Positions 8,498-30,360 of a stretch of 64,000 nucleotides of DNA are shown in pieces. Position numbers and translations under genes: made by a program. The notes beneath the pieces are model-generated. The model saw nothing but the letters and a program-made list of their open reading frames with translations. It was not told where the DNA came from and ran no database searches. This DNA is from Macrostomum lignano (lineage: Eukaryota). Location of the stretch: contig NIVC01003327.1 of the NCBI GenBank assembly GCA_002269645.1, forward strand, positions 6,033-70,032, read 5' to 3'. Every line of letters begins with the position of its first letter. Position 1 is the first letter of the stretch.

Positions 8498-11400
8498 ATG
8501 GCGCACAAAGATGCCTTAGACCTGAAGCTCACAAAGGAGTTACAAGACATTCTCAGCAATAAGCCATATAAGCTTTCAAAAGAGTTCAGTCAAGATGATC
8601 TGGCAATTGACAATAAATTCTTAGGTAATTCAACATTTACTTGATAACCTTGATTGTACTTTAGATTACAATTAATTTACATATATATATTATATATATA
8701 TTAAGACGCAGAGAGGAGGCCCCTTCCACGCACGCGTTCGCAGAACAGGCGGGAGGGGCAGGCAGCAGCAGCCTGAGGGGTCAGCTCAAGCGCCTGCAGG
8801 TCCGCAATGAGGCAGTTCATTAGGGTGGCAGTGCGAGCCTGGCCACGGCGCAATTGTTCGGTCGGCCGGTGCAGCATGGCCAGGGCCAGAGGGACGGGCG
8901 CGCCGCGACCCAGGGTCCGTAGGCAGTGGCCCAGCAGCATCTGGCGGCGCCGGCGCAGTATGGCACTCAGGGGCGGAGTTCCGGCGCGGGCCATCAGAGC
9001 GTTGGTCGGCAGGCGATCCGGATAGTGCACGCCCAGCGCGTAGCGCAGCAGCGATCGGTAAAGCGCGTCCAGGGCTCGCTCTCGCGTTTCGGTCAGCGGC
9101 ACAGCCTCCATGCCGTACAGAAGAATCGGCTCGACGGCCGTGCGAAACAGGCGCACCTTCAGGTCGTCTCTGGCAGCTGAATTAAAAACGTTCCTGAGGA
9201 GGTGAGCGGCGCGCCAGGCCTGATTCCTCCTGTCGGAGACAATCGCATCGGGGCTCATCACCAGGGCGCCGAGGTACCGGAAGTCCTCGCACACCGCGAT
9301 GCGATCTCCATTGGGCAGCGTTAGAGTTGGGGCGGTATTCGTGCCCATGTGCAGCGCCTCCGTCTTGCGAGCATTCACCAGCAGCCCAACACGGGCGCCC
9401 TCGTCGCACAGCCTTGTGAGAGCGCGCTGGGCCGCAGCTGGGTCGCGGCAGAGCAGCGCGATGTCGTCAGCATACGCGAGAGCGGGAAGCGAAACATCAG
9501 GGTGTCTGGAGCTTCGGCGTGGGACCAGCAAGTAGCTGTCATCCTCGCGGAGGGACCGACGAAGCACGTAGTCCACAACCACGAGGAAGAGCAGAGGAGC
9601 CAGCGTGTCACCCTGAAGAACGCCTAAGCTGGTGCCGAACTCTTCTGTGGGGCCGTCGCTCGACATGACAAAAGCCCTGGAGTCGCGGTAGAGGTCCATC
9701 ACCGCACTCACCAGCGCAGCAGGCACGCCATATTGCGATAGAAGCCACGCGATCGCAGGCCTGGACACCGAGTCAAACGCCTTGCGAAAGTCGACGAAGA
9801 TGATTGACACGGAGCGCTGGCGGGTCTTGCAGGCCTCGATGACAGAGCGGATGGTGGCAACCTGCTCGGTGGTGGACCTACCCGGGCGGAAGCCGCTTTG
9901 GAGGCTCAGCAGCAGCGGGTTGAGGCCGGGCAGCAGGCGGTTGCGCAGAATTGCGTTCAGCAGCTTCAGCGTTGTGCATTCCAGTGCGATGCCCCGCTGG
10001 TTGTCCAGGCTGGTGGAGGCGCCTTTCTTCGGGATGGAGACGATCTTGGAGGTGCGCCATTGCTGAGGAGCTGAGGCGGTCTCGTTGCCTCCAAGGCTGC
10101 AGTGTTTGTTCAGCAGGCTGGTGATGGTTGGGGTGAGTTCGGGCAGCTTCAGGACCCTGGGAGGGATGGCGTCCACCCCAGCGGCGGCATCAGCTCGCAT
10201 GGTCCTCAGTGCTCGGTCAACCTCGCCTGCAGTGATGGGGCCGGTGTTGAAGGCGCTCGGCTGGGCTGGAGTGAAGTCCGGGATTGGCAGAAGAGGCGCA
10301 GTTGGAGCGGGCGCGTTGAGCACCTCGCGGTAGTGGGCGGCCAGTAGAGCCTTGCGGTGCTCGGTGGAATCGGCGCCGACGATGGTGCTGGGCCTGGGTT
10401 TCCTGCCTGTCAGCTGGTTGATGGCCCTCCAGGCAGCGCTATGGCGGCAGTTGTCAGTGGCGAGTTGGATTTCGCTCACAACCTCTTCGATGAAGGCTTC
10501 AGTCCGTCGGGCGTAGATGCGCTGCAGCTCGTCCCTGGCAGCACTGGACTGGTCGCTGTCATGGCCGTGGAGTGCAGCAGTGCTCTGCACATGCCGCCTT
10601 GCCTGGGAGATGACGGGATCGCGGTCCCACAGTGTCTTTGGATGGTTTGCCTGTCTCCGTGGGAGAAGCGCTGCAGCATCCTCAACAGCGTGATGGAAAG
10701 ACTCGAAGGACTCGGCTGGAGCAGGAGTGGCGGCAAGCAGCTTGCGAAGGAAGGCCTGCCGCGTGTCCGGGTTTCTCAGGTCGGCCCAGAGCGGGTGAGG
10801 TGGCGCAGGCCGGAGCTTTTGCCAGTGCAGGTCGAAGTCGCATGCCACCAGGCGGTGATCAGATTGAACGCAGTCGGGGCGGATATTGAGGACTCTGCGC
10901 ACCCTGGACCTCAGACCAATTGGGCAGAGAATCCAGTCCAGCCGAGTGGTTCGCCCGTTGGGACCAGAGAAAGTTGGGAGCTTGCTGAAGCGCTGTCGCA
11001 AGGGGCCGTTGACAGTTATCAGATCTCTGGCCTGGATAAAACTAGATAGAAAAGGAGAGTTGGCATTGGGGGTGCCACAGCTGTTCTTTACCAAGCGGCC
11101 GTCAGCTGGCAGTGGCGAGTTGAAGTCACCAGCGACAATGACAGAATCACGAGCAGGGATGGAATCAAGCGTGCAGCCCAGGGTGTCGTAAAGGGCTTCT
11201 GTCTCAGATGGATCTTCGCTGGTCCGAGGGGCCGTTGGGGCATAGACGCAGATGACTTGCAGATGAATTGCAGACGCAATTTACATAGCTACCTTGTATT
11301 TCAAGCATACTACATTTGTTAAACAATTACTGCTAAAAATTTCAAGAAAATTATACTGTAATTTAACGAGTGTCACATTTTCACGGTCAGGTCTAGACCA

Positions 11401-14400
11401 CGACATTCCAAAGCTGGGTCGCAGCAAAGCTGTGATCGTTTCTGGCATAGCATTCTCTGCCAACTGCGACGTTGCAATGATCCAGGAGGCCAAACCATCT
11501 GCCCGAGGCCTCTGGTACCTGCCGGCTGGCAGACTCGAACTTAATGAGTCATTGGAAGTAAGCAATAACTGCAATAGTTATTTACCATTATTTTAAATGA
11601 TCTGCAAACATTGATCTTTAAAAAGTAAAGCATTAGTGTGCATTCAAGAGAATCATCTTGCCTATCTGAAACACTGTTTGTGTCCCTGAAAATATTGTTT
11701 AATAAACTTTTTTTACCTAAAGGGCCAGATACAGAATCTAGCACAGGACTGCGGGCCAGAGGGGAGAGGAAAGGGAAGAGAAAAGAGACGAGAGACGAGA
11801 GAGAAGAGAAAAGATATGAGATTTGAAAGAGAGCTGAGAAGAGACACAAACCTCGAGCGGACCGGATTGCTATTGTGAAATTTCAAAGTACCCGAGGGCC
11901 GGATAGAGAGGCTTGGCGGGCCGGAGTTTCTCGACCCTTGGTTTAAAGCATGCAAATCTTTAATCCTTTGAATAAATCCTTTCATAATTTATTCAAACCA
12001 AAACACTGGTACATCCCAGACCAATGAATCACATTTCCAAACGCTTTGGCATTTGGAACACCAAAAAAGTAGACAACTTGGAGTATTTCGACTAAAACAG
12101 CCAGATGGATGCAGGATGAAGATGTTACCGTGACTAGAGGGTTACAGAGTCGCAGTTTTAGAAACGCGTCTAAAAAGACTCTCAGACCAAAAACCGACGC
12201 TAAAACAGCGCTAATTTTTCTTACGGTATAAAAAATTCCTGCCATTTCGTCTGTTTTCTAGGACGCGGTCAAGCGCGAATTCCTCGAAGAGGTTGGACTG
12301 CAATTCGAGCCACGCCTATTAGTCAGCATCGAATGCCGCGACTGTCATTGGATTCGCGTCAACTTTCTTGGCGAAATTGTCGGCGGAAAGTTGAAGGCAA
12401 GTTTGCTGTTTTTTTCTTCTAGTCAATTATTTGGCCACAAAACCATCTTCAGTGTATATTTATTTAAGTTAAAAACTTGATTTGCATGTTGACTCTGATA
12501 GATTTCTTGTTAATAATTTAACAAGGAATTATATTTTGCGTTCGCCAACCACACTGCACTGGTCAGACGACCTATTAAATTTTGACGCTTGAGGTTGGAG
12601 ACTAGCTTTGCTTTGGTAGAGGTTGTTGATTAGAGGTTAGTTTTGGCCTTGACCTTTAGAAGTTGGCGTTACTTTATACGAGCTACGAGCGTAACACTTG
12701 GACGCTGACAGACTCGCTCGAATAGCAACAGGTCTGATTCGTCTAAGCGTCTAAGCGACCCTTTGAAAACGTTACCGTGACAAGAATCGCAAAAGAGTCA
12801 TTGCAAACAACTCACTAGTGAGTGCCTCTGACGACTCTTGTGACTTTTTTACCGACTCAAATGACTGTAGAAGCGACTGTTGAGCCACGAGCGCATGGTT
12901 GTAGAATCGTAAAATGATTCGCGAAAAAGTTGTCCAAAAGTCGTGTTAGCGCTTATCTTTCTACTACCTCCAGTAAGACTAAATTAGAGTTGTTATACAT
13001 GTAAATGCGAAATGCGATTCTATAATTCATAAAGTGATGCAGACGCGCTTTTAGACTCCTAGGATACGAATCTACGGCTCCAGAGTCATTACAGAAGTGC
13101 ACCAAAGTCACTCGCGTCACCCCAGTGTTGTTTCAGAGTCGCAAACAATAAAACGCCTCAAACTGACTCTTAGGCGAATCTTTGAAGACTTTTTGGCGAC
13201 TTTTATCGTGACATTTCGTCGTTTCAGAGTTGTCTAGAGTTGCACATCTTTCCTATTTTGCCTGTGTTATCACAAGAGCTCAGGGACGACGCAAGTGACT
13301 CTGGGATGCTTCTTGGCCTAAGTAACCGTTTTCATCGGGCCGTATGGACCAGGAGGTGCTGCTTTTGACTGCAGGCGCTCCAATGCAGAGGACGGGCACT
13401 CGCTCGGCGTTTTGTCGATTTTCAGTCTATCTTAATCTTATTTTATGCTATCTCTATCTTAACCAGTCTGTCAGCAAATATGAGCACTATCACGATGCTG
13501 TTTGAGATACTTATTTATAAATTATTTATATCATACAACCGCAATTTCAACTGCAGAACAAACCGGACGAAGAGTCTCTATGCGCCAAGTGGATCCCGTT
13601 GAAAGACGTTATTGGGTAAGTTGATTAAGAATGTATAATTACATGTCTACTAGAAGTAGTATGCATTCTTTAAATTGTGCACGAAGAAAGTATGTTTAGA
13701 AGTTACATGTAACTATTAAATTATTTCAGAGCGCGCATTGAACTTCGGTGAGTTATCAAATTTTGTCTTTAAAAATGTCACACACTTCAAATATCTTACA
13801 TTACTTCTGCATAGCTAATAAACTAACCAAATTCAGTTCAGCAGACATAATACCAATGTTAGTATTGGCTAATCATTTGGACACTCGCCGGAAGAAGCCA
13901 TCGATTCCGCGTCTGCCGTTAGCAGTCAGCTGGTCGGCGTGTCACGTGCGGCTGTTCATACATTGTCCGGGTGGCGCTGTCAGCAGCGATACGGATTCGT
14001 CTGTGTCGAAGGTGCTCTGTCGAGTGCTGCCAGATGGCGCCGGTGCCCGGCTGCCTGTGGTGCGAATGCAGCACCCGGGTAGCTTCGGGGTCCTTGCCGG
14101 CACTCTGACTGAAAAGGTGACGTACTAACTATAGTTTCTTAATGATTTTTTAGCATTTTAGACCACCGCTTGTCAATATCGAATTTTTAGACAAGTCAAT
14201 TAGCACTGACATTGTCATCCGAAGGCACTAAAAGACAAAAATATTCAATTAGTAGTAGTATGATATAAAGGTCTGAGCCACACTTATTGCTCGGGCGCAG
14301 TGCGCGCCAGCTCGCTGGATGACTCAGCCCCTTATATCACACTACTACTACCAGGAGGTCAGAGTTGCAAGGTGTCTGAGATAAATATATAATATATATA

Positions 14401-17400
14401 TATATATATTGTGTGAGGGTGTTGAGGGTGAGGGCATGTGTGGGCATTGGCATGTGGAATATTTCGCAGAACACAGATTTTTCAGAATTTTTATACTTTT
14501 AAAAAAGGAGGGCGCCCTCGCCCTCATGCCCTCACTCATTTTTAAAATCACAAAAATAAGTGAAAAATGACTAAAAACAGGTGAAAATGGTCTGAAAACA
14601 GCGATTTTTGTGTTTTTCAAATATTTTGAAAAGGTGCAATTTTCACGATTCCAGCTCTAAAACCATGAGAAAAGTTGGATTCACGGGTCAATTCAATGCA
14701 ATTTCAGGTATATACAATATGAAAGTGTCATCCAATTTAACGATAGTAAATTTTAAATACATAAAATGGCCTTCAGTAAACCATTATTTCTAGGAAATGC
14801 TTTAGATATTCAGTCAGCTATAACAAAACTACCACCCATCTTCTGCACGATACTTTTACTGGGTCTTCTGTTTGCAATTCATTCAGATTGTGTGCATGCA
14901 TGTGTAATGTTCGTCATTTTTGTCTATTTTTAGTAACAGAAAAATAGACGAACTGGAGAGAAAGAATTGGTTGCCAAAATCCAAAACCAAAACCAAAGCT
15001 AAAACTTTTTTGGTCGGATGATTTGGTCGCGAGTATTGGTCAGATTGAAATGTTGAGTGGGTGAGCGGGGGTAGAACCTCTACAGTATCTATTGAAGTGG
15101 CAAGTCTACGGGGGTCAGACAATAGCTGGCCATATTGTTGCGGTGTGAGCTTGTTTGTGTGTAGCGCGAATAGAAGCCCGAATTCCTGTGTTAGTCATCA
15201 GACTGTGTCTGCGACCCTTCGGGGCGATCGAGTGAAGTTTGCCTACTTGCTTTGCTATAGCCGACCATATTGTTGCAATGCAAACTTGTTTATGTGTAGC
15301 GCGAATAGAACCCCGAATTCCTGTGTCAATGCAATCAGAATGTCTGCGACCCTTCGGGGCAATTGAGTGAAGTTTGCCTACTCTGCCAAAAAACAACTCT
15401 GAGTCAAAATGTAAGCAAAGAGGTCATGCTAGTTTCCAAATATTCAAAAAATACTTTGTGACTTGAAAAATGAAAACTACATGGCTAAATTTTTCCTAGA
15501 AAAAATGGAAGCTAATAACCCAAGTGTACGAAATGCTCTACCAAAAAATACTATGATTCTATTATATCATTTTCTCAAATTAAAACCCACACTCGAAAGT
15601 CTCGACTAATTGCAGAAATTGATAAAGCTTACGATGAATATAAAGCTGAAATATTAAAACACACCGATTGTAAATGTCCCCCCTTATTTGTATTCATTCA
15701 GAGTATATCTTGCACATGTTGATAAATGGGCATTGATTTCGAGACAGCACATAAGGAATGATGAATTTTTCGTCATGCTGAAATTGAACATTTTCAAACT
15801 CCCCATAACCTTTGAGAAGTACATTAAAACCGATAAAATATATCGTTGAATTTATTTTTAATAAAATGGAACGAAAAAATCAAAACGATTCAAGTGTCTC
15901 TCCTGTGATCGTACAGGATCCGCTTCAAAACCATGATGCACCACCACCACCAAGATTGACAAATTTAAAACAAACAAAATCGTACGATAAACTAATTAAT
16001 CTCTATGGAGAACGTAATTTTAGATTCGGAAATTGCAGTATAACATAGAATAGTAAAACAAAGAAAAAAATACCGTCAGGTATGCCAACCAAAGCAGATA
16101 GGAATTCAACCTCCCCACCATTTCAACCAGAGGTAGACAACATGATTTGGATAGATACTCGAAATTCAAATATAACCATAATCGATATTGATAATGCTGA
16201 CCTATGCCCTGAGTTGAATGAACTGTGTATGACTCATTGTGATTGGATTGTTCAGACAAACAAGGGTCACCACTTTTACTTTAACAAGGTAGATGGATTA
16301 AAAGTAACGATTCAACAAAGTGTGGGTTTTGATATTCCGGCTTTAGTATTTGCTCCACCAGGTTTCTATTATGTCGATGGTGAAATGAAGGAATACAAAC
16401 ATATAGCCCGAAGGGTTAATTGACATGCCATATGTAATTCTTGAGGAGATAAATAGATTAATTAAGCCACAGGATAAAACAGAAAACCAAGAACCCGATA
16501 AACAAGCACTAAAAAGCACCGTTCCACCACCCACTTGTGAAGGAGTTTCAAGGTTGTTAAGTATAATTCAACACAAAAATCAAGACTATGATTCTTGGTA
16601 CAAGGTAGCACTCATACTCCGCGACATAGACAGTGGTGATGAAATGTACAAAGTATTCACTGATTGGTCAAAAGTAAATTATGATAAGTTCGATTCCGAG
16701 TCATGTAAAAGGGTGTGGAATAGCACCCGTGCCAGCTCTGCTGATGCACAGGACAGACTTACTATCGGTACGTTGAAGAAATGGGCTAGTGAAGAAAACT
16801 ATGGTAAATATAAGGAATGGAAAAGCAAATATGATTATTATGGTAGGATTTAGTATCTTGATGATAATTTCACTGACGTTAACATACCAACGTTGTTTAT
16901 GAATATAAGAAGAATAATATAATTTACAATAGCGATGGTATTTACTATTTTGATGATGATAAGTGGAGAGAACTAAGTAGTATAAATGACATATTTCTTA
17001 AAATATCACACCTTGTTAGCAGTGGGTTAAACCACCGAAAGACTAGACTTGAAATTGCAATTAAGAAGGCTGATGATAAAGAGAAGTTAAAAGCACTTGA
17101 AAAGAAACTAAAGAACACAATGAAGAATATAAATTCAATACAAGGAGCCAACAAACTCAAACAGGTAACTACTTTGTTCAAAGAGAGGTTTACTAACAAT
17201 GAAATTGAATTCGACATGAAATGGAATTTGCTAGGGTTTAACGATGGAGTATATGATCTCGCTACAGGTGAGTTTCGCTAGTATAGATATGAAGATTACG
17301 TTACTAAATCGGTGGGATATAATTACTCCGATGTACTTAGAGTTAGTGATGACGACTATGGCTTCATTGTTAATCTGCATAACCAAATCCATCCAGATCC

Positions 17401-20400
17401 AGAGAACAGAAAAAGTTGGGAATCCGTTATAGCCACAGCTCTAATGGGTAAGAATGTTGAAAACTTTATAATGTTTGATGGCGCTGGTGGAAATGGCAAG
17501 GGGGTTGAGGACAACCTACTTCTTAGAACTCTAGAATCTGATTATGCAGCACCACTGAGTCCTGATGTTTTGAATTCACCAATAAGAATAGACAGGCCAC
17601 AACCAGCCCTAGCACAAATTAATAAAAAGAGGTGGTTATCAGTCAAAAAGTAAGCGGTGTCTTGAACAATGCATTAATAAAATTACTAACTGGTGGTGGG
17701 GTTATCCAAGCTAGAAATTTACATTCAAGCCAGTGTAATGTCGTTTTACACGCAACTCTGATAGTCGAATGCAACAACAAGCCTGACTTCAGACAAAATA
17801 TTGGAGATGCAGAGAAGAGGAGAATTATCAATATTAATTACCCGTGCAAATATACAACAGATAACGAAATCATTAATTGATCCTGAGAAACACACTTACA
17901 AGGCCGATCCATATTTGAAAAGTGAGGAGTTTGCAGAGATGAAACACCTACTAGAAATTTTATAAAACCGAATGCTTCTGACATGAGAATGTATGACTCT
18001 GTTGAATTGACTTCATGAACTATTTGACCTCCAGCAACATTGAGATTATTAGTGCTACCTGGTGTTGGCGAAATCTTGATATAGTCTTCTTTCTTTTCGA
18101 AAAAACTAAAAGTTTTGTCCTCATATAGGTTCAGTATATACTTTTTGTTTTCAATTTTTGTACGAGAAATTTTAACTAAGCTTCGTGAGGTCTAAGAATT
18201 ATCCCATTACCCTGTTTCTCCTTTTCAACTTTAAACATCTTTAGCAGCCACTTGACTTCTTCGCTGGGTACTTGTTCGACTCTTTTAGCCGCATCAACTA
18301 ATACTCCGCTCCCTTGAGCCTTTTTCAACTCTTCTAGTTTTTTGTCGTTCAATGCTTTCTATTGTCTTATTATGCTTAGCATTGTTGGCTGTATTAACAT
18401 TTTTTGCAATCATTGTACCAACTCCGGAGGCTGCTCCGATACCACCCAAAATTGCTGGTAGCAAGCCCAATAGAGGAATTATTCCACCTTCATGTTCTTT
18501 CTGTTTGTCTTGCAATTCTCGAATCTTCTCTTTAGAAAGATACTGCTTTTGCTTATTTACAGTAACATACCTTGGTTTCCCCTCTCGAACATATCGATTG
18601 AGTCTGGCTTCAGTGTTTTTGTCGCTCATTTTTAAGGTCAGAATTTCTTCAAACCATTGCCTTGTCTCAAAGACACTTGAGACTGTTCTGCTGATCCTAG
18701 AGCCTTTTTAACAATGTCTTGAATGGCCTTGTTTGATTGAGAAGCTATCTGTTGCTCTTCTTCCATTCTTTTCTTTGCTTCTTTATCTCTACGTTTCTTT
18801 TTAATATATTCCAGTTCCTCACCTGCTTTAGACATGTCACTGTAGGTTTTCTTTGCGTCGAATATGTTTTTAGCTGCTGTTGCTGTTTTACCTATGGCAT
18901 CAGCTCCACTCACAATTTTACTTCCATGATTTGATAAAAAGTTTGTGACACCACTGATCATATCACCAATTCCTTCACCCTCTTTATCAACTAGTAGTTG
19001 TGAATCAGACGTTTCAATCTGACCTTTCGCCCGTTTGCAGTTTGTTCGATAGGCGCTCATTTTTAGTTGAAAAATTTGCTGGTAGAAGCTGGGATTTGTA
19101 AAATGATCCAATAATTTCTTCTCCATTCTCATCCTCAATAATGTAAGTTATGGGATTTGAGTACACAAATTTCTTAATCGTAAAAACCTCTGAAATTTTC
19201 CAATAACCCTTTCGACCCTTTTCAAAGTGCTCTTTGAATCTATAGATATGAACTTTGTCACCTACTTTAAAGTTTGGTTTCTCATTTGAAACCTCGAAGT
19301 AAGGCTTTGGTACTCGCTCAGGATGTTTAGATGCTTCTGAAGGAGTTATCAGAATCTCAGAATGGATTGTGTTGTACTTATCAACAATAGCTGGCAATAT
19401 GTGGAGCCACTTCTGGTTTCCTTGTAGATCAAATTCAAACCATAGTTTCTTTGTGAGAGTACGATTGAACCTCTCAATCATTGCATTCTTAGACTCGCCA
19501 TAAATTGAAAACATCTTGTTAATATACTCCCCGTTTTCATCTTTCTTTCTTATGTTGTCTTTTGAAAACGAGTATAGCTTGTACATATGCTAATTATAAA
19601 ACTCCTTGCCTTCATCTACACAAAGTCTCTCTGATCGTCTTCCTGATTCCTTAAATACTTTTTGGAAAGCTTCTGCAACTTCCGCTCCCGTCTTTGTTTT
19701 CAAAGGTACTGCCCAGGCGTCACGTGTAAAACCATCTATGATAGTGAGTGCATATTTGTAACCTCTTTTAGGAGGAAGGATTATTATGTCTGCATGCCAA
19801 ATTGTGTCTTTTGCATAGTGAATCATTTTTCTAAACAGTCTTGGTTTTCTGTATTCCCTATGCAGCTTCACAGCATCTTCATAGCTAAGACCCTTTCCAT
19901 AAATGGTTAGACAGTCTATACAATTGTTGGGGTTGTGAGTATGAATGCCTAATCCAAACCGAACTTTAGCCTTGATAATACGCTTTACTAGATTTCTAAT
20001 GAGTCTCTCTTTCACAGACAAGTCACTGGTTGGAATAGCATCTAAATCAGTTATCATTTTTTCATCAGCAATATGCTTCTTTGCTAGGGCTTCCTCTGGA
20101 GTTGAAGACGTTTTTTCAGCATCTCTATAGTTTTTGTCATGATAGTAAGCAGTCCAATCTATTGGTTTAATTGGTAGACTGTCATACCGAGGCCAGTCTG
20201 TAATTGGATTGAGTCTTTTGTCTAAATTTGTATCAGGCAGTTGTCCCTCAATCTTTCGAAAGAGGCTGGACTTTATCTTAAGGCTTCATCAGGATTAACC
20301 AGATCCTTCAGCCCCAACCCCATTAAGTCTCTGAACCTTCTCCATATCCTTGTCAACTGGGTCGGACGTACCTATGGTACTCGAACTTCTTTCGGACTTG

Positions 20401-21789
20401 TCCGTGTTATCAGAAGATTTAAGCTCTAATGCAATCTTTCAGTCAACGTGAACAAGGTCAATCTTTTTTACCTTCTCGAATCCAAAATAATTTTCTGCTA
20501 ATATTTCATATAGTCTGCCTAGTCTCATTTGAATAACTTTAATCTTGTGTGAAATCTTTAACTCTTCTTGAAAAAGATCATGAAGAATTTGATCATGCCC
20601 AACCTTATCATCAATTAGTTTCAGAAGGATTTTTCGAATTGTTTGCTCCATTTTTACTTTAGAAAAGTTAACAAGTGCTTATTCTATGACTAGCAAGGAT
20701 ATTGACTTCCTCACTCAGGCCACAACGTAACCTGCGAAAGAATACCCTGGAATTTGAAATTCGCCAGGATATTTTCCAGTGGAGAAGCTGGGTGGTAGTT
20801 TTGTTATAGCTGACTGAAAATCTAATGCAGAACCTAGAAATAATGGTTTACTGAAGGCCATTTTATGTATTTAAAATTTACTATCGTTAAATTGGATGAC
20901 ACTTTCATATTGTATATACCTGAAATTGCATTGAATTGACCCGTGAATCCAACTTTTCTCATGGTTTTAGAGATGGAATCGTGAAAATTGCACATTTTCA
21001 AAATCGCTGTTTTCAGACCATTTTCACCTGTTTTTAGTCATTTTTCACTTATTTTTTTGTGATTTTCAAAATGAGTGAGGGCATGAGGGTGAGGGCACTC
21101 TCCCTTTTAAAAAGTATAAAAATTCTCAAAAATCTGTGTTCTGCGAAATATTCCACATGCCAATACCCACACATGCCCTCGCCCTTAAGCACCCTCACAC
21201 AATATATAAATATATATATATATATATATAAATTTTTACATATTTATATACTCATCACACCACCTTGCAACTCTGACCTCCTGGTAGTAGTAGTGTGATA
21301 TAAGGGGCGAGTCATCCAGCGAGCTGGCGCGCACTGCGCCCGAGCAATAAGTGTGGCTCAGACCTTTATATCACACTACTACTTCAATTCTTTATAAATT
21401 GTTCTATAAACGTCTACTGCTTATGCTCAGGTATTTTAACGTCATTTTTTTATATTTCATTCGATTTTCAGTTAACAGGCCGTAAGGTGCAATTTAGAGC
21501 GGTGCTTCACAGCGAATTCCTTTCGGCTAACAACGCCAACTGCGGAATATTTCTCACTCTGCTGTGCCGTCTGTTGCCATGGCAACAGCAGTCCGCCTCG
21601 GCAACCGCAAAGCAACCTCCAGCGTTGCATCAGAACTTTGCTTGGCTTCCGTGTCCTCAGCTAGCTGACCCGCTGGTTTTGCCGGACGAGTTTGAGCAGA
21701 CTCTGTCGAACTCTGCCAAACTGAACGAACATTGCAGCCACCTGTGCCTGCTAGGAGCCTGCAGTCATTCTGATTTTCGGCTCAATTGA
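8498..21789 (+). CDS. NUDT18: Nudix hydrolase 18-like (8-oxo-dGDP phosphatase), 7 exons, ~367 aa
   Basis: Exons 8498-8624, 11391-11557, 12262-12396 (GC donor AG|GCAAGT), 13557-13615, 13730-13747 (18 nt), 13837-14116 and 21472-21789 are phase-consistent and total 1104 nt. They give [40 protein letters not shown] (Nudix box) and a C-terminal CGIFLTLL...PPALHQNFAW, both similar to NUDT18. Confidence 0.88.
8684..11277 (-). mobile_element. 5'-truncated APE-RT non-LTR retrotransposon (RTE-like) in NUDT18 intron 1
   Basis: TSD AATTTACATA at 8674-8683 and 11278-11287. A (TA)n tail at 8684-8700 directly abuts the ORF stop codon. Confidence 0.9.
8701..11277 (-). CDS. LINE ORF2: partial AP endonuclease + reverse transcriptase
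   Basis: The frame stays open upstream of the listed 11094 start. APE motifs: VYAPT, GDFN, LDWIL, SDH. RT motifs: QSGFRPGRST, FVDFRKAFDSV, GVLQGDTLAPLLF, YADD, FRYLG. Confidence 0.93.
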   Translation of the reverse strand, partial: ASAIHLQVICVYAPTAPRTSEDPSETEALYDTLGCTLDSIPARDSVIVAGDFNSPLPADGRLVKNSCGTPNANSPFLSSFIQARDLITVNGPLRQRFSKLPTFSGPNGRTTRLDWILCPIGLRSRVRRVLNIRPDCVQSDHRLVACDFDLHWQKLRPAPPHPLWADLRNPDTRQAFLRKLLAATPAPAESFESFHHAVEDAAALLPRRQANHPKTLWDRDPVISQARRHVQSTAALHGHDSDQSSAARDELQRIYARRTEAFIEEVVSEIQLATDNCRHSAAWRAINQLTGRKPRPSTIVGADSTEHRKALLAAHYREVLNAPAPTAPLLPIPDFTPAQPSAFNTGPITAGEVDRALRTMRADAAAGVDAIPPRVLKLPELTPTITSLLNKHCSLGGNETASAPQQWRTSKIVSIPKKGASTSLDNQRGIALECTTLKLLNAILRNRLLPGLNPLLLSLQSGFRPGRSTTEQVATIRSVIEACKTRQRSVSIIFVDFRKAFDSVSRPAIAWLLSQYGVPAALVSAVMDLYRDSRAFVMSSDGPTEEFGTSLGVLQGDTLAPLLFLVVVDYVLRRSLREDDSYLLVPRRSSRHPDVSLPALAYADDIALLCRDPAAAQRALTRLCDEGARVGLLVNARKTEALHMGTNTAPTLTLPNGDRIAVCEDFRYLGALVMSPDAIVSDRRNQAWRAAHLLRNVFNSAARDDLKVRLFRTAVEPILLYGMEAVPLTETRERALDALYRSLLRYALGVHYPDRLPTNALMARAGTPPLSAILRRRRQMLLGHCLRTLGRGAPVPLALAMLHRPTEQLRRGQARTATLMNCLIADLQALELTPQAAAACPSRLFCERVRGRGLLSAS
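11720..11940. mobile_element. hAT (Charlie-like) MITE end fragment
   Basis: Ends GGCGGGCCGGAGTTTCTCGACCCTTG with upstream GGGCC(A/G)GA motifs typical of hAT subterminal regions. The partner end and TSD were not found. Confidence 0.3.
14251..14845 (+). repeat. Left terminal inverted repeat of the Polinton-like element
   Basis: Reverse complement of ~20784-21383 with scattered substitutions and a ~19-bp indel. The first 99 nt are self-complementary at their ends. Confidence 0.92.
15130..15382 (+). repeat. Two diverged 135-bp direct repeats with predicted hairpins
   Basis: Copies start at 15130 and 15265. Both keep GTAGCGCGAA...TTTGCCTAC, CAGA-loop-TCTG and CCC-TTCG-GGG. Confidence 0.85.
15520..15850 (+). 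pseudogene. Possible small viral ORF of unknown function (start lost)
   Basis: Stop-free frame of ~108 codons, PKCTKCSTKKYYDS...KHTDCKCPPYLY...KTDKIYR*, directly upstream of the primase. No family was recognised. Confidence 0.25.
15866..17965 (+). pseudogene. Prim-Pol + PriCT-2 + D5-like SF3 primase-helicase (disrupted)
   Basis: Prim-Pol motifs IIDID, TNKGHHFYF and LVFAPPG. PriCT-2 motifs DYDSWYKV, FTDWS and TIGTLKKWA. D5_N motif LLGFNDGVYDLATGEFR. Walker A GAGGNGKG, motif C ECNNKP, arginine finger EKRR. In-frame TAG at 16046 and 17279, and frameshifts near 16405, 16850-16915, 17645 and 17878. Confidence 0.9.
17960..18140 (-). pseudogene. N-terminal remnant of a Polinton-type major capsid protein
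   Basis: The minus frame ILNLYEDKTFSFFEKKEDYIKISPTPGSTNNLNVAGGQIVHEVNSTESYILMSEAF resembles my recollection of Polinton MCP N-termini. It runs into the 3' end of the convergent helicase. Not in the ORF track. Confidence 0.5.
18176..18629 (-). CDS. Adenovirus pX/mu-like core protein (one frameshift)
   Basis: Basic N-terminus followed by GGIIPLLGLLPAILGGIGAASGV, similar to the adenoviral pX GG(I/F)LPLLIP motif. Removing one A from the run near 18340 extends it to LEELKKAQGSG...QGNGIILRPHEA*. Confidence 0.6.
18638..19060 (-). CDS. Polinton-type small virion protein with G-x-G-x-G motif and amphipathic helix
   Basis: MSAYRT...EGEGIGDMISGVTNFLSNHGSKIVSGADAIGKTATAAKNIFDA followed by a K/E-rich coiled coil. 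The ORF is intact (track 18638..19138; the ATG at 19060 is the likely start). Confidence 0.6.
   Translation of the reverse strand: MSAYRTNCKRAKGQIETSDSQLLVDKEGEGIGDMISGVTNFLSNHGSKIVSGADAIGKTATAAKNIFDAKKTYSDMSKAGEELEYIKKKRRDKEAKKRMEEEQQIASQSNKAIQDIVKKALGSAEQSQVSLRQGNGLKKF
19014..20285 (-). pseudogene. Parvovirus-type PLA2-like domain fused to an rve DDE integrase (one premature stop)
   Basis: The frame is open from 20285: LPDTNLDKRL...PIDWTAYYHDKNY...KHIADEKM (HD plus D). Integrase catalytic residues lie in WHAD, LCVDEGKEF and MIERFNRT, with a C-terminal PITYIIEDENGEEIIGSFY. ORFs 19590..20057 and 19014..19586 share one frame, separated by a single TAG. Confidence 0.88.
20390..20651 (-). pseudogene. 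PD-(D/E)xK restriction-endonuclease-like ORF (disrupted)
   Basis: QMRLGRLYEIL...GFEKVKKIDLVHVD*KIALELKSSDNTD when read through one TGA, giving a D...ELK nuclease-like motif. Confidence 0.5.
20784..21383 (-). repeat. Right terminal inverted repeat of the Polinton-like element
   Basis: Inverted copy of 14251-14845. 21286-21383 can fold on itself. Confidence 0.92.
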
Positions 21790-21852
21790 TGTTCTTTACT
21801 AAAGGGAAAATACTGTTCTCTTTGGTCGAGAAAAGAAAGGGTTTGAAGCTCC

Positions 21853-21939
21853 CTGATTGGTCAGGTTGTAGAATTTTTTGGAGTTATCTGATTGGTTAGA
21901 GGAAGAAAAGAAAAGAAGGCTTCCGGGTAATCTGATTGG
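21853..21939. promoter_or_regulatory. Cluster of three CCAAT boxes plus an ETS-like site
   Basis: CTGATTGG at 21853, 21888 and 21932, and CTTCCGG near 21920. No target gene was identified. Confidence 0.3.
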
Positions 21940-22217
21940 CCATTGATGGTACATGTAACTTTTATTAGAAAAAAAACGGGCGTTTTGTTATTTAAAAATC
22001 GACCAATTTTCTGACAGCTTTGAAACAATTCAGTTTAAAGTGCTACATGTATTTCGCTTGTTCGATTTTTTTTCTGATGCTTATTGCAACAATCGGTTTA
22101 TTTTCCTACCAAAATTAAATTCTTTCTAACTAAAAAATTTAATATTTATCAAATCATTTCTTCCCAGTTATTCTGCGTTACAGCAAATTTTTATCGCATG
22201 CACCGTGTACACTTGTC

Positions 22218-23150
22218 GGGTTGCTTTCACAAACGCGAAATTTCACAACCGCTAAATCACCTACTTTCATAAACGCGAAACTTCACAACCGCGAAACTTC
22301 ACAACCGCTAAATCACCTACTTTCATAAGCGCTAAATTTCACAACCGCGAAACTTCACAACCGCTAACTTTTTTGCAGTCACTTTCATAAACGCGAAACT
22401 TCACAACCGCGAAACTTCACAACCGCTAAATCACCTACTTTCATAAGCGCTAAATTTCATAAACGCGAAACTTCACAACCGCTAATTTTTTTGCAGTCAC
22501 TTTCACAAACGCGAAACTTCACAACCGCTAAATGCCATCTACTTTCACAACCGCTAAATGTCATCTACTTTCACAACCGCTAAATGTCATCTACTTTCAC
22601 AACCGCTAAATGTCGTCTACTTTCACAACCGCTAAATGTCATCTACTTTCACAACCGCTAAATGTCGTCCACTTTCGCAACCGCTAAATGTCATCTACTT
22701 TCACAACCGCTAAATGTCATCTACTTTCACAACCGCTAAATGTCGTCTACTTTCACAACCGCTAAATGTCGTCTACTTTCACAACCGCTAAATGTCATCT
22801 ACTTTCACAACCGCTAAATGTCGTCTATTTTCACAACCGCTAAATGTCATCTACTTTCACAACCGCTAAATGTCGTCTATTTTCACAACCGCTAAATGTC
22901 ATCTACTTTCACAACCGCTAAATGTCGTCTACTTTCACAACCGCTAAATGTCGTCTACTTTCACAACCGCTAAATGTCATCTACTTTCACAACCGCTAAA
23001 TGTCGTCTATTTTCACAACCGCTAAATGTCATCTACTTTCACAACCGCTAAATGTCGTCTATTTTCACAACCGCTAAATGTCATCTACTTTCACAACTGC
23101 TAAATGTCGTCTGCGCGAAACTTTACAATCGCCAAATATGTCATCTACTT
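22218..23150 (+). repeat. Left foldback TIR: 26-bp tandem array (TTTCACAACCGCTAAATGTCATCTAC)
   Basis: Directly visible; inverted partner at 29615-30360. Confidence 0.95.
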
Positions 23151-24725
23151 TCTTATTATAGTAGAGTTCCATTGCCAATTGAGCACAGATACCGAGTGGT
23201 AGGTGTTACGTTCTGTAACAGTGACGTCAATAATTACTCTCAGTTAAGTTAAGGCAGATACTCGTACATTTTGCATATGTAATGAAGCTATTATACATTC
23301 GTCTTCTCGGTGGGGGCTTCATAAGACCAAAATTTCCTAATGTTTGAACTGTAAAGTACAGGGCAGTACTTAAGACACGGAAATTTAGGAATTATACAGA
23401 AATTATAGAGTAGTCTGAATATATTAATAATAAAACAGTATATAATTATACAGATTTAGGACTCGGAACTCGGAACAGAGGAGGGTTTTTTGACCGTGTC
23501 TTTAATGAAAGAACACTTGTTTCCCATTCGGGAAGAGAGCATACTCGTACTGTTTTATTTTCCTGGCCCTTGTGCCTTCCTCAATTCTCACCAGCCATAG
23601 CAGGTTCCGGCTCTACATTGATGGGGTAGCGGGGAAACGCGGGTACAAACTGCCAGAGTCTAGAGGTTGTATGACTCTGCGGACACATGTCTCACACTTT
23701 TTACGTTATACTGAAACGCAGTCACAACACATGAGACAGAAAATTTCACAACGTCATAATACTGTACTATCCTACTTAGCGTCTCAGTTTTTTTACTGTT
23801 TCTTTTTCTTCACTCACACGTGTTGGAAACAGAAAGAAAAAGACAAATTGTTTGCTGTAAGTTTTCACTGTACTCAATGATGTTGTAGTATCCATGCTCC
23901 ATGGTTTTCCACTTCGATTTCGACCTTTTGTATTATTCAACTTTGACAAACGGCAAGATAGCAACAACAAAACTGAAAAATGTGCAGGAAACTTGTGGGC
24001 ACTAAATTATACATTTAAATCCTGCTATATCTTTTAGAGGCTTTGCACCTTGAGTACACGGTTTATAGAACAAACGATGGAAAGCTTATGAACCGTAACT
24101 TGTTGTAACTTGAGAAAAAAGTGCGAATGCCACGTTCTTTAAAAAAGAAACCTAGATACTGCTATTTTAGAAGGATAAATGCTATAACAATGCGAACGAA
24201 CTCTAATTTTATTATAATATTTACTTTGATAATGGGACATTATTAGGCATTAGATAATAAGACTATGGGCCTAGTCTGAAGTACTTTTTCCTTGCGATTT
24301 TCTCTCGTATTGTTCATTATGATTATTCACATTGCTCACAGTTTTCTCTCTGGCCACTGGATTCCTATGCCCTATGGAATTTGTCAAGGTGCCACCCTCA
24401 TAAGTTTTGGCTAGCAATGCCGTCTCACAGGCCACTCTCACGAATTCTCCGTTTGTATCTTAACCAGATTTATGCACCGGGTACATGATAGCTGCTTATT
24501 GCTCGCAATAATATTTACGTTACTTCGAATCATATTTGTTGTTAATTCTTATTACTAACCTCTCCCCGTCCTTTTTAACTTCTACGCTGAGAGCCTATCG
24601 TCCTTTTCTGCACTTAATTCTTATTTTCAATCTGTTCAATCTGAATGCAGACTCTGCTTCCGCCATATATTCCTGTGGTCACGTCCTGCGGCCCTGTGGC
24701 CCTTTTCTATTACGAAACGTCATTG

Positions 24726-29614: not shown

Positions 29615-30360
29615 TTGAAGGACATTTGGCCGTTGTAAAGTTTCGCAGTTGTGAAAGTAGATGACATTTAGCGGTTGTGAAAATAGACGACATTTAGCGG
29701 TTGTGAAAGTAGACGACATTTAGCGGTTGTGAAAGTAGATGACATTTAGCGGTTGTGAAAGTAGATGACATTTAGCGGTTGTGAAAGTAGATAACATTTA
29801 GCGGTTGTGAAAGTAGATGACATTTAGCGGTTGTGAAAGTAGACGACATTTAGCGGTTGTGAAAGTAGACGACATTTAGCGGTTGTGAAAGTAGATGACA
29901 TTTAGCGGTTGTGAAAGTAGACGACATTTAGCGGTTGTGAAAGTAGATAACATTTAGCGGTTGTGAAAGTAGATGACATTTAGCGGTTGTGAAAGTAGAT
30001 GACATTTAGCGGTTGTGAAAGTAGATGACATTTAGCGGTTGTGAAAGTAGATGACATTTAGCGGTTGTGAAAGTAGATAACATTTAGCGGTTGTGAAAGT
30101 AGACGACATTTAGCGGTTGTGAAAGTTAGATAACATTTAGCGCGTTGTGAAAGTAGACGACATTTAGCGGTTGTGAAGTTTCGCGGTTGTGAAATTTAGC
30201 GCTTATGAAAGTAGGTGATTTAGCGGTTGTGAAGTTTCGCGGTTGTGAAGTTTCGCGTTTATGAAAGTGACTGCAAAAAAGTTAGCGGTTGTGAAGTTTC
30301 GCGTTTATGAAAGCAAGTGCTTTTAGCGGTTATGAAATTTCGCGTTTGTGAAACCCACCC
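29615..30360 (-). repeat. Right foldback TIR: inverted 26-bp tandem array
   Basis: (GTAGATGACATTTAGCGGTTGTGAAA)n, directly visible. Confidence 0.95.

What the first reader, a model, noticed from the sequence alone, without database searches (positions are those of the whole stretch)
14245..21389. Compact Polinton-like endogenous virus in an animal intron with an unusual gene set
Seen: AGTAGT termini, ~600-bp TIRs and a 6-bp TSD enclose 7.1 kb. A plus-strand primase-helicase converges on a minus-strand cluster: nuclease-like, PLA2-integrase, amphipathic protein, pX-like, capsid-like stub. Established: animal Polintons are typically 15-20 kb and are defined by protein-primed PolB, packaging ATPase, protease and capsids. 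None of PolB, ATPase, protease or minor capsid is visible here. Inference: either a deletion derivative of a primase-helicase-based integrating virus lineage, or a satellite element dependent on a helper Polinton for capsids.
Basis: partly seen in the sequence, partly recalled or inferred. Interest (0 to 1): 0.87.

Follow-up and report, generated by a model that had tools for sequence, protein, structure and literature searches.

The report
Decayed, gutted Maverick/Polinton virus fossil
This is a dead, internally deleted copy of a Maverick/Polinton-type virus lodged in a repeat-rich, probably invertebrate genome; its kind is already known, but its integrase gene carries a lipase domain and is interrupted by a self-splicing intron, which is uncommon.

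Summary
A 7,133-bp element lies at window 14251-21383. It has AGTAGT...ACTACT termini, ~600-bp terminal inverted repeats (95.7% identical) and a 6-bp target duplication, TCAATT.

- **Plus strand:** an AEP-primase/PriCT-2/D5_N/SF3-helicase gene.
- **Minus strand:** a PLA2-rve integrase, two small genes (one pX-like) and the first 69 codons of a double-jelly-roll capsid gene.
- **Junction:** the capsid stub and the 3'-truncated helicase gene abut, so one deletion or recombination event removed the whole capsid-assembly block.
- **Decay:** every gene but one is broken, so the element is a fossil.
- **Closest relative:** a metagenome scaffold (79% integrase identity) is collinear up to the capsid gene. 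More distant relatives on long contigs are ordinary pPolB Polintons.
- **Primase-helicase origin:** I could not show whether it was native to the parent. [quoted passage not shown]
- **Not supported:** nothing supports the satellite reading or the "intron" location.
- **New here:** the "nuclease-like" ORF lies inside a group I intron that splits the PLA2 domain of the integrase. That intron scores above the Rfam threshold in the relative and is a dead remnant in the window. Both this element and its relative end in hairpin-forming palindromes.

The parts
14245..14250 (.). Left copy of the 6-bp target-site duplication, TCAATT
   Evidence: Read directly. Identical hexamer at 21384-21389.
14251..14848 (+). 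Left terminal inverted repeat. It starts AGTAGTAGT. Its inner edge holds a copy of the start of integrase exon 1, from 14766.
   Evidence: 95.7% identity to the right repeat over 577 aligned bases, with 6 gap events. Leader copy.
14251..14349 (.). Left terminal palindrome. The terminal 21-mer is repeated in inverted orientation about 57 nt inward.
   Evidence: Folds as single-stranded DNA at -22.6 kcal/mol, z = -4.6, with 0 of 200 shuffles as good.
15122..15382 (.). 135-bp direct tandem repeat (1.9 copies) in the ~1-kb non-coding stretch between the left repeat and the primase-helicase gene
   Evidence: Function not tested. No similarity to the flanks of primase-helicase relatives.
15866..17962 (+). 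Primase-helicase pseudogene (AEP/Prim-Pol-like, PriCT-2, D5_N, SF3 helicase). It has at least 4 frameshifts and 3 in-frame stops, and its C-terminal part is missing.
   Evidence: Pfam and PHROGs. Exhaustive HMMER search: 3,974 hits, best 44-47% identity. Aligns to residues 101-788 of the 966-aa relative P0123. Weak extension in a further frame.
17949..18155 (-). Stub of the double-jelly-roll major capsid gene: first 69 codons only. The codon aligned to the relative's start is not ATG.
   Evidence: 71% identity to residues 1-69 of L001 gene 3595-4851, which matches DJR-like_dom at 7e-12. Also matches the capsid N-terminus of L003.
18176..18629 (-). pX-like small gene, with 1 frameshift
   Evidence: 63% identity to L001 gene 3124-3567, which matches Adeno_PX at 6.8e-5, below Pfam's cut-off.
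18638..19060 (-). It is the only gene without a break.
   Evidence: 68% identity over all 143 residues of L001 gene 2684-3115, with no stop or frameshift. Only weak SAD_SRA similarity. Function unknown.
19014..20861 (-). PLA2-rve integrase pseudogene. Exon 1 is 20861-20730, the intron remnant 20729-20238 and exon 2 20237-19014. It has 1 in-frame stop and one substitution in the calcium-loop motif, and its intron is no longer intact.
   Evidence: 79% identity to P0001 and 74% to P0002. Many homologs combine PF08398 and PF00665. Alignment A1 shows the conserved D, D, E and HD..Y residues. Bounds.
20238..20729 (-). Remnant of a group I intron inserted in the calcium-loop codons of the PLA2 domain. 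About 340 nt are missing relative to L001, including most of the ribozyme core.
   Evidence: RF00028 scores 30.5 bits, E = 1e-4, in the window and 65.3 bits, E = 2e-14, in L001:1187-1519, above the gathering score of 50. Boundaries come from the intron-less relative L007.
20301..20651 (-). Remnant of the intron-encoded nuclease-like ORF (Eco47II-like). It has 1 in-frame stop and about 100 codons deleted.
   Evidence: 56% identity to L001 gene 776-1477, with 127 of 233 residues aligned. That gene matches RE_Eco47II at 6e-4. Homologs in L002 and L005 have recorded PF09553 hits.
20779..21383 (-). Right terminal inverted repeat. It ends ACTACTACT and contains the start codon and first ~27 codons of integrase exon 1.
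21286..21383 (.). Right terminal palindrome
   Evidence: Folds at -24.2 kcal/mol, z = -4.9.
21384..21389 (.). Right copy of the 6-bp target-site duplication, TCAATT
   Evidence: Read directly

Best explanation
The element is an endogenous fossil of a Maverick/Polinton-class virus (Polintoviricetes in the broad sense, closest to the 'group 2' or adintovirus-like kind).

**How it got there.** The parent virus was inserted by its own retrovirus-type (rve, DDE) integrase. That accounts for the AG...CT termini, the long inverted repeats and the 6-bp duplication. This step is inferred from established knowledge of Polinton integration.

**Inferred parent layout.** At one end sat an integration and virion-core block: a PLA2-integrase split by a group I intron that carries a nuclease ORF, then two small genes. 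Next came the capsid-assembly block: major capsid protein, penton, packaging ATPase and others. At the far end, pointing inward, sat the replication gene. Here that gene is an AEP-primase/SF3-helicase rather than a protein-primed polymerase.

**What happened to it.** A single internal deletion removed everything from codon 70 of the capsid gene to the 3' part of the replication gene. The ends, the replication gene and the integration block were left. The copy then decayed neutrally. It cannot replicate, integrate or make particles.

**Shown:** the ends, the gene identities, collinearity with L001, the double truncation at one junction, the breaks, and the intron.

**Inferred:**
- The primase-helicase was already the replication gene of the parent virus.
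- The timing of the deletion, before or after insertion.
- In intact relatives the PLA2-integrase is a virion component whose lipase helps entry.
- The intron spreads by homing through its nuclease.
For: - **Ends:** TSD, termini and inverted repeats.
- **Collinearity:** L001:559-3793 matches window 20864-17957 at 72% DNA identity. The match runs from inside the repeat through the integrase and two small genes into the capsid gene, and stops after 69 codons.
- **Relatives' layout:** L003, L004 and L005 show the order integrase, small gene, DJR capsid, about 195 aa, A32-like ATPase and so on. In L003 the replication gene sits at the far end on the opposite strand.
- **Truncated replication gene:** it aligns to residues 101-788 of a 966-aa relative and ends where the capsid stub ends.
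- **No sign of a second element:** there is no pPolB remnant, and no secondary inverted repeat or duplication around the primase-helicase segment.
- **Shared composition:** by tetranucleotide distance, none of 106 host windows is closer to the replication half than the integrase half is. Only 3 of 106 are closer to the integrase half than the replication half is. Both halves share a CpG depletion of 0.53-0.66, also seen in L001 and L007, while the host flanks are about 1.0-1.1.
- **Decay:** every gene but one is broken, in keeping with 4.3% divergence between the two repeats.
[quoted passage not shown] A replicon-turnover model exists for PLVs.
Against: - No full-length relative was found that combines this primase-helicase with this integrase and capsid block.
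- The relatives of the integrase lineage that sit on long contigs carry pPolB (L003, L005) or unidentified large genes (L002, L004).
- The four close primase-helicase relatives lie on 3-5.5-kb contigs. These share upstream genes with each other but nothing with this element.
- A more distant primase-helicase relative sits in a virophage.
- The primase-helicase is only 37-47% identical to its best relatives, while the integrase side is 72-79% identical to L001. The two halves are therefore not equally well anchored.
- With one copy, a deletion in place cannot be told from insertion of an already deleted genome.
Confidence: 0.6

Rival explanations
1. Non-autonomous mini-element. The deletion arose in a replicating virus genome before this insertion. 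The 7.1-kb form, with ends, replication gene and integrase but no capsid genes, spread as such, relying on a full-length relative for particles.
For: - Complete, matched ends with a clean 6-bp duplication.
- What survives is exactly the two end modules, which carry the cis-acting ends plus the replication and integration genes. That is the pattern expected of a defective but mobilisable genome.
- Its size and long repeats recall capsid-less linear elements such as transpovirons.
Against: - Only one copy is seen. The window holds no other fragment of the family, and none of ten window ORFs looked up (nine from the element, one from the neighbouring MULE) occurs anywhere in the protein collection.
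- The junction cuts through both the capsid gene and the replication gene, so the event damaged the replication gene itself.
- There are no clean gene boundaries of the kind expected in a lineage selected as a satellite.
- The terminal motif is absent from IMG/VR.
Confidence: 0.2
2. Chimera. The primase-helicase half comes from an unrelated element of the virophage/PLV gene pool. It was joined to a pPolB-type Polinton by illegitimate recombination or by a nested insertion followed by deletion, so the parent lineage never used this gene for replication.
For: - Relatives of the integrase lineage on long contigs have pPolB.
- Primase-helicase relatives share no other gene with this element and have their own conserved upstream genes.
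- A distant relative is encoded by a virophage.
- The primase-helicase carries more breaks per kb than the integrase side.
Against: - No pPolB remnant, and no internal inverted repeat or duplication bracketing the segment.
- The left inverted repeat continues straight into the primase-helicase side, so a recombinant would still need a matching second end.
- The two halves have similar tetranucleotide composition and CpG depletion.
- The gene occupies the position and orientation of the replication gene in L003.
- Replicon swaps within one capsid lineage are reported as frequent, which blurs the line between 'chimera' and 'native'.
Confidence: 0.17
3. Chance or assembly artefact. The repeats and duplication are coincidental, or two unrelated contigs were joined.
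For: None found. Only one assembly could be read.
Against: - About 600 bp of inverted repeat at 95.7% identity and a 21-mer terminal motif with 0 expected by chance.
- An independent metagenome scaffold shows the same terminus type and gene order.
Confidence: 0.02

Closest known systems
Maverick/Polinton elements and adintoviruses (class Polintoviricetes), especially the 'group 2' Maverick-Polintons of bioRxiv 10.64898/2026.06.19.733378
   Same: - AG...CT termini, inverted repeats of several hundred bp and a 6-bp duplication.
- An rve integrase.
- A double-jelly-roll capsid gene next to a pX-like gene and, in relatives, an A32-like ATPase.
- A parvovirus-type PLA2 domain.
- A replication gene that may be an AEP-primase/SF3 helicase instead of pPolB.
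   Different: - Only 7.1 kb, with no capsid-assembly block and no pPolB.
- PLA2 is fused to the integrase. The PLA2 genes described in the papers I could read stand alone (CAP, PLA2X).
- The integrase gene is split by a group I intron.
- The ends are hairpin-forming palindromes.
- Membership in group 2 by capsid or ATPase phylogeny could not be tested.
Metagenome scaffold L001 (ENA ERZ28573525, BUSI22-1_SAMN19433717_METAG-scaffold_64596)
   Same: 72% DNA identity and the same gene order from the inner repeat to capsid codon 69. It has the same AGTAGTAG terminus with a terminal palindrome and the same intron at the same codon.
   Different: Its genes are intact, its intron is complete (65.3 bits) and its capsid gene continues for at least 419 codons. 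The contig ends there, so its replication gene is unknown.
Group I introns with homing-endonuclease ORFs in viruses, including the RF00028 hits reported in protist Polinton-like viruses (PMC12220804)
   Same: - A full-length RF00028 match.
- The 5' exon ends in U and the intron ends in G.
- A guide sequence near the intron's 5' end can pair with the exon end.
- An ORF extends into the ribozyme core.
- Close relatives differ in whether the intron is present.
   Different: - It sits in the PLA2 calcium-loop codons of an integrase gene. In the cryptophyte PLVs the introns are reported in a short gene upstream of the capsid gene.
- Its ORF is Eco47II-like, a restriction-endonuclease-type nuclease rather than one of the classical homing-endonuclease families such as GIY-YIG and HNH. 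That assignment rests on weak Pfam hits.
- The window copy is a dead remnant inside a nuclear genome.
D5-like AEP-primase/SF3-helicase replication genes of virophages, PLVs and nucleocytoviruses
   Same: The domain order Prim-Pol-like, PriCT-2, D5_N, SF3 helicase. A distant relative is encoded by a virophage. PLVs associated with entomopoxviruses use D5-like primase-helicases.
   Different: Only four close relatives exist in 1.8 billion representative proteins, at 44-47% identity. No sequence match to any solved structure. Here the gene is paired with an rve integrase, not a tyrosine recombinase.
Transpovirons (~7-kb linear plasmid-like elements of mimiviruses)
   Same: Similar size, long inverted repeats, a helicase gene and no capsid genes.
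   Different: - Transpovirons encode an SF1 helicase and no rve integrase.
- They are not known as chromosomal insertions with 6-bp duplications.
- Here the lack of capsid genes is due to a deletion that left a capsid stub.

Membership tests
Maverick/Polinton (Polintoviricetes) | Terminal inverted repeats of hundreds of bp with 5'-AG...CT-3' termini | tested here: met
   Repeats 14251-14848 and 20779-21383, 95.7% identical, with AGTAGT...ACTACT termini.
Maverick/Polinton (Polintoviricetes) | 6-bp target-site duplication | tested here: met
   TCAATT on both sides.
Maverick/Polinton (Polintoviricetes) | Retrovirus-type (rve, DDE) integrase | tested here: met
   PF00665 at 1e-9. 1,359 homologs. 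The conserved D, D and E columns are present. Relatives match retroviral integrase cores in the PDB. The window copy is a pseudogene.
Maverick/Polinton (Polintoviricetes) | Protein-primed family B DNA polymerase | tested here: not met
   No PF03175 hit in the frames scanned. No tblastx match to the pPolB genes of L003 or L005. An AEP-primase/SF3-helicase sits in its place.
Maverick/Polinton (Polintoviricetes) | Double-jelly-roll major capsid protein | tested here: inconclusive
   Only a 69-codon stub survives. It is homologous to the N-terminus of genes that match DJR-like_dom in L001, L003, L004 and L005. The stub itself holds no jelly roll.
Maverick/Polinton (Polintoviricetes) | Packaging ATPase, maturation protease, penton | tested here: not met
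   Absent from the window element. An A32-like ATPase is present, on faint recorded hits, in L002-L005. I identified no protease in any relative.
Group 2 Maverick-Polintons (bioRxiv 10.64898/2026.06.19.733378) | [quoted passage not shown] | not testable with these tools
   The authors' profiles are not available here, and the window lacks both genes. The capsid and ATPase genes of relatives could not be submitted to the large searches.
Group 2 Maverick-Polintons (bioRxiv 10.64898/2026.06.19.733378) | Variable replication module (SF1/SF3 helicase fused to a polymerase or AEP primase), rve integrase, frequent phospholipase domain | tested here: met
   Prim-Pol-like, PriCT-2, D5_N and SF3 helicase, plus rve and PF08398 in the gene family.
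Group I intron (Rfam RF00028) | Covariance-model score at or above the gathering score (50 bits) | tested here: met
   L001:1187-1519 scores 65.3 bits, E = 2e-14, with the full-length model. The window copy scores 30.5 bits, below the threshold, because about 340 nt including most of the core are missing. It qualifies only as a remnant, by homology to L001.
Group I intron (Rfam RF00028) | Exact insertion defined by an intron-less homolog; 5' exon ends in U, intron ends in G; a guide sequence pairs with the exon end | tested here: met
   Comparison with the contiguous L007 places the boundaries after ...GGT and after ...CTG, which leaves the reading frame intact. GCCTG at intron positions 9-13 can pair with the exon end CAGGT (U·G at the splice site) in both L001 and the window. 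Splicing itself was not observed.
Parvovirus-type phospholipase A2 domain (PF08398) | Calcium-loop motif (Y.G.G type) and catalytic HD..Y motif | tested here: inconclusive
   Both motifs are present in relatives P0002 and P0005-P0012, with recorded PF08398 hits. The window keeps HD..Y. Its calcium loop has one substitution and is split by the dead intron. No enzyme activity was tested.
Transpoviron | SF1 helicase, no integrase, association with a giant virus | tested here: not met
   The helicase is D5-like SF3. An rve integrase and a chromosomal duplication are present.
Virophage (Maveriviricetes) | Sputnik-type major and minor capsid proteins | tested here: not met
   The capsid stub is homologous to DJR-like_dom genes of Polinton-like loci, not to the Sputnik_MCP or V18-19 genes seen in L014.

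The most novel reading that the evidence does not exclude
The element and L001 may represent a Maverick-Polinton lineage with three linked departures from the textbook type:
1. The integrase is made as a fusion with a parvovirus-type phospholipase. This implies that it travels in the particle and takes part in entry.
2. That gene hosts a mobile group I intron with a restriction-enzyme-like nuclease, possibly in an animal-infecting virus.
3. Protein-primed replication has been replaced by a primase-helicase, together with hairpin-forming terminal palindromes. That would mean a different way of copying the genome ends.

On this reading the 7.1-kb form would be a capsid-less replicon-plus-integrase mini-element, not a mere wreck.
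Probability: 0.12. Interest if true: 0.75.

Novelty: new member of a known kind. Interest (0 to 1): 0.48.

Why it matters
The 7.1-kb copy is an inactive fossil and matters little by itself. Its value is as a pointer to a poorly sampled lineage of Maverick/Polinton viruses.

- **Replicon exchange.** It adds a chromosomal example of an rve-integrase Polinton-type element carrying a primase-helicase instead of pPolB. That bears on how freely replication modules are exchanged among these viruses.
- **PLA2-integrase fusion.** PLA2 fused to the integrase is widespread in metagenomes: more than 50 of the top 120 homologs have that architecture. I found no description of it in the papers available here.
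- **Intron mobility.** It gives a clear case of a group I intron, with a nuclease ORF, present or absent among close relatives of one viral gene. In L003 and L005 the homologous nuclease gene lies free-standing upstream of the integrase gene. That arrangement is what the published model of mobile-intron formation by capture of a free-standing nuclease gene would predict.
- **Genome ends.** Terminal palindromes conserved in structure but not in sequence raise the question of how the ends of such genomes are replicated or recognised.

Tried and rejected
- **Indexed protein search with the helicase frame:** no hit. The exhaustive search found only four close relatives.
- **Context of the primase-helicase relatives:** five contigs of 3-5.5 kb, none with a capsid, integrase or matching ends. 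IMG/VR holds no relative.
- **Further copies or relatives through the terminal motif, a conserved intron block and the nuclease protein in IMG/VR:** nothing.
- **Exact look-up of ten window ORFs in the protein collection:** none present.
- **Other fragments of the family elsewhere in the window:** none.
- **Spliceosomal-intron reading of the split integrase:** considered because GT follows the break. Rejected because no AG lies at the homology boundary, because the group I boundaries (U, then G) give an exact in-frame junction, and because RF00028 matches.
- **Nested-transposon reading of the primase-helicase segment:** no bracketing repeats.
- **Replication genes of L002 and L004:** the large ORFs match neither Pfam nor PHROGs families for polymerases, primases or helicases.
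- **Sequence searches of solved structures:** nothing useful for the L001 capsid and nuclease genes or for P0123.
- **Rfam miRNA-like and frameshift-element hits in the repeats:** far below threshold, dismissed.
- **Structure prediction:** not used. The only intact window protein would have had to be folded without an alignment, and the intact relatives' genes from fetched loci may not be submitted.
Full report
**1. Observation**

The element occupies window 14251-21383 (7,133 bp). It begins AGTAGTAGT and ends ACTACTACT. The hexamer TCAATT flanks it on both sides, at 14245-14250 and 21384-21389.

The inverted repeats are 14251-14848 and 20779-21383. A gapped alignment gives 552 matches in 577 aligned positions (95.7%) and 6 gap events.

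The terminal 21-mer (AGTAGTAGTRTGATATAARGG) occurs four times in the 64-kb window: at each tip, and again in inverted orientation about 57 nt inward. Shuffled sequence gives none.

**2. Coding content**

*Plus strand.* The gene at 15866-17962 matches Prim-Pol (weakly), PriCT_2 (4e-13) and D5_N (9e-9). The part carrying the nucleotide-binding loop matches phage 'DNA primase' families.

An exhaustive HMMER search of 1.8 billion representative proteins gave 3,974 hits. Only four scored below 1e-30, at 44-47% identity. They have the architecture PriCT-2, D5_N, helicase. More distant hits add Prim-Pol and DUF5906.

The 966-aa relative P0123 aligns over its residues 101-788. Two other relatives extend the match weakly in a further frame, up to about 17959. 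The C-terminal part of the protein has no counterpart.

*Minus strand.* The integrase frame has 1,359 homologs. The best is 79% identical, and many combine PF08398 (the parvovirus VP1 N-terminal PLA2 domain) with rve. Some also have a chromodomain.

Alignment A1 shows the calcium-loop and HD..Y motifs in relatives. It also shows the conserved D, D and E residues of the integrase core.

**3. The closest relative and the capsid stub**

L001 is a 4,853-bp metagenome scaffold. It aligns to window 20864-17957 (minus strand) at 72% DNA identity. Its genes are:
- an Eco47II-like nuclease ORF (6e-4);
- the integrase;
- a 143-aa gene;
- a 147-aa gene matching adenovirus protein X (6.8e-5, just under Pfam's cut-off);
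- a gene of at least 419 codons matching the double-jelly-roll domain (7e-12).

The window follows L001 up to codon 69 of that capsid gene, at 71% identity with no stop, and then stops.

L001 itself begins with about 200 bp of unrelated DNA. An AGTAGTAG terminus and a ~165-bp terminal palindrome follow. It is therefore also an integrated copy with the same kind of end.

Relatives at 42-54% integrase identity on long contigs show the classic order:
- L003, L004 and L005 have integrase, small gene, DJR capsid, a gene of about 195 aa, A32-like ATPase and so on.
- L003 has pPolB at the far end on the opposite strand.
- L005 has pPolB upstream of the integrase.

**4. State of the genes**

Counts only.

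| Gene | Breaks |
|---|---|
| Primase-helicase | At least 4 frameshifts, 3 in-frame stops, C-terminal part missing |
| Capsid | Only 69 codons left; the codon aligned to the relative's start is not ATG |
| pX-like | 1 frameshift |
| 140-codon gene | Intact |
| PLA2-integrase | 1 in-frame stop, 1 substitution in the calcium loop |
| Intron and its nuclease ORF | 1 internal deletion of about 340 nt (about 100 codons and most of the ribozyme core), 1 in-frame stop |

With 4.3% divergence between the two repeats, this amount of damage is what neutral decay after insertion would give. That estimate is my inference. The single intact short gene is not evidence of selection.

**5. The junction**

The capsid stub (17949-18155, minus strand) and the end of the primase-helicase gene (17962, plus strand) abut within about ten bases. 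Two convergent genes, each truncated, meeting at one point indicate a single deletion or a single illegitimate recombination.

In L003 the replication gene sits at the far end pointing inward. A deletion running from just inside the capsid gene to just inside the replication gene would produce exactly the layout seen here.

**6. Is the primase-helicase native?**

For:
- There is no pPolB remnant, and no internal repeat or duplication brackets the segment.
- The two halves resemble each other in tetranucleotide composition. None of 106 host windows is closer to the replication half than the integrase half is. Only 3 of 106 are closer to the integrase half than the replication half is.
- Both halves share CpG depletion (0.53-0.66). 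This is also a property of L001 and L007 (0.47-0.51), whereas the host flanks are about 1.0-1.1.
- A 2026 preprint reports that group 2 Maverick-Polintons of animals often replace pPolB with SF1/SF3 helicases fused to an AEP primase and often carry a phospholipase.
- Chimeric 'MELD' viruses and a replicon-turnover model are also described.

Against:
- No full-length relative combines the two halves.
- The close primase-helicase relatives sit on short contigs with their own conserved upstream genes.
- A distant relative is encoded by a virophage.

I rate 'native replicon, internal deletion, fossil' at 0.6, a trans-mobilised mini-element at 0.2 and a chimera at 0.17.

**7. The split integrase: a group I intron**

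In L007 (74% identity in the alignment) the PLA2 N-terminus is contiguous with the integrase. In L001 and in the window the first 44 codons are separated from the rest. The intervening segment is about 835 nt in L001 (694-1528) and 492 nt in the window (20729-20238). It holds the nuclease-like ORF.

Rfam's group I intron model matches L001:1187-1519 at 65.3 bits (gathering score 50, E = 2e-14, full-length model). It matches the window at 30.5 bits.

The boundaries that restore the L007 reading frame are the canonical ones: the 5' exon ends in U and the intron ends in G. GCCUG at intron positions 9-13 can pair with the exon end CAGGU, placing U·G at the splice site, in both copies.

No such intron is found in L002-L007. 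In L003 and L005 the homologous nuclease-like gene lies free-standing upstream of the integrase gene, which is unsplit in L003. Presence or absence among close relatives is the usual mark of a mobile intron.

Group I introns have been reported in protist PLVs, in a different gene. I found no report of one in an integrase gene, or in Maverick-Polintons of animals, in the library available.

The window copy has lost most of its ribozyme core and cannot be functional.

**8. Ends**

Each tip of the element is a ~99-bp palindrome. As single-stranded DNA these fold at -22.6 and -24.2 kcal/mol (z = -4.6 and -4.9). L001 has a longer and nearly perfect one (z = -12.8). Apart from AGTAGTAG, the sequences differ between the two elements, so it is the structure that is conserved.

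It may provide paired integrase-binding sites, or a fold-back that helps copy the ends of a genome lacking a terminal-protein-primed polymerase. I could not test either idea. I do not know L001's replication gene.

The start codon and first ~27 codons of the integrase lie inside the right repeat, so a copy of them sits in the left repeat.

**9. Host and location**

The window is repeat-rich eukaryotic DNA. It contains:
- a LINE with an endonuclease/phosphatase-type (Exo_endo_phos) nuclease and reverse-transcriptase domains (8704-11280);
- a MULE/FLYWCH/RING transposase (24726-26870);
- a Hint-module exon (32498-33169);
- an AIG1/GIMAP-type exon (35356-35790);
- a C2H2 zinc-finger ORF;
- many minisatellites.

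This content, together with CpG near expectation, is compatible with an invertebrate animal and unlike a vertebrate. It is not proof. No exon flanks the element within several kilobases, so 'in an intron' cannot be judged.

**10. Comparison and verdict**

The element works like, and is a remnant of, a Maverick/Polinton-class virus. It meets the tests for ends, duplication and integrase. It fails the pPolB test and has lost the capsid-assembly genes.

Its gene combination fits what is now described for group 2 Maverick-Polintons, though membership by capsid or ATPase phylogeny could not be tested. It is not a transpoviron or a virophage.

I classify it as a new member of a known kind.

The group I intron in a PLA2-integrase fusion gene and the terminal palindromes are the parts most worth following up.

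Noticed in passing
window 20238-20729 (-); L001:694-1528: A group I intron with an Eco47II-like nuclease ORF interrupts the calcium-loop codons of the PLA2 domain of the integrase. It scores above the Rfam threshold in L001 and is a dead remnant in the window. The close relative L007 lacks it.
   Followed up: yes
window 14251-14349 and 21286-21383; L001:200-364: Both tips of the element, and the tip of its relative, are hairpin-forming palindromes. The terminal motif is repeated in inverted orientation. The structure is conserved but the sequence is not, apart from AGTAGTAG.
   Followed up: partly
window 20779-20861 (-) and 14766-14848 (+): The start codon and first ~27 codons of the integrase lie inside the right inverted repeat, so the left repeat holds a silent copy of them.
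   Followed up: partly
protein family of P0002 and P0005-P0012; L003:10001-11356: A parvovirus-type PLA2 domain fused to the N-terminus of an rve integrase is widespread among metagenome proteins. In L003 it sits in an otherwise ordinary pPolB Polinton-like locus. In L004 the PLA2 is a separate 117-aa gene just upstream of the integrase. I found no description of the fusion in the papers available.
   Followed up: partly
window 15122-15382: A 135-bp tandem duplication (85% matches by Tandem Repeats Finder) lies in the ~1-kb non-coding stretch upstream of the primase-helicase gene. It could be a regulatory or origin-like repeat.
   Followed up: no
window 14251-21383 versus flanks 11300-14244 and 21390-24700: CpG observed/expected is 0.63 in the element and 1.05-1.12 in the flanks. 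The depletion is also seen in relatives L001 and L007, so it looks like a property of the virus family rather than of the host.
   Followed up: partly
window 22226-23112 and 29641-30312, around 24726-26870: Two arrays of the same 26-bp minisatellite in opposite orientation bracket a MULE/FLYWCH/RING transposase ORF of 714 aa. This may be one large Mutator-like or foldback element with repeat-built ends. It starts about 840 bp from the Polinton-type element.
   Followed up: no
window 8704-11280 (-): An open frame of 859 codons with an endonuclease/phosphatase-type (Exo_endo_phos) nuclease domain and a reverse-transcriptase domain, in a GC-rich (63%) island: a LINE-type retrotransposon.
   Followed up: no
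window 32498-33169 (-) and 35356-35790 (-): A Hint-module exon (4e-31) and an AIG1/GIMAP-type GTPase exon (6e-23), separated by a 39-bp coding-looking tandem array (34221-35229). These are the only host-like coding features recognised.
   Followed up: no
window 51897-52548 and 57388-63909: A telomere-like 12-bp repeat (TTAGGGTTTAGA, 54 copies) and a 6.5-kb satellite with a 20-bp unit. The right half of the window is mostly minisatellites.
   Followed up: no
L014:4459-6951, with L014:10081-14015: A distant relative of the primase-helicase (PriCT-2, D5_N, DUF5906) is encoded by a ~25-kb virophage-like contig carrying Sputnik-type capsid genes.
   Followed up: partly
L008:3826-5182: Downstream of the closest full-length primase-helicase gene lies about 1.4 kb of repeated palindromic units with no called gene of any size. 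This may be the end of that element.
   Followed up: no
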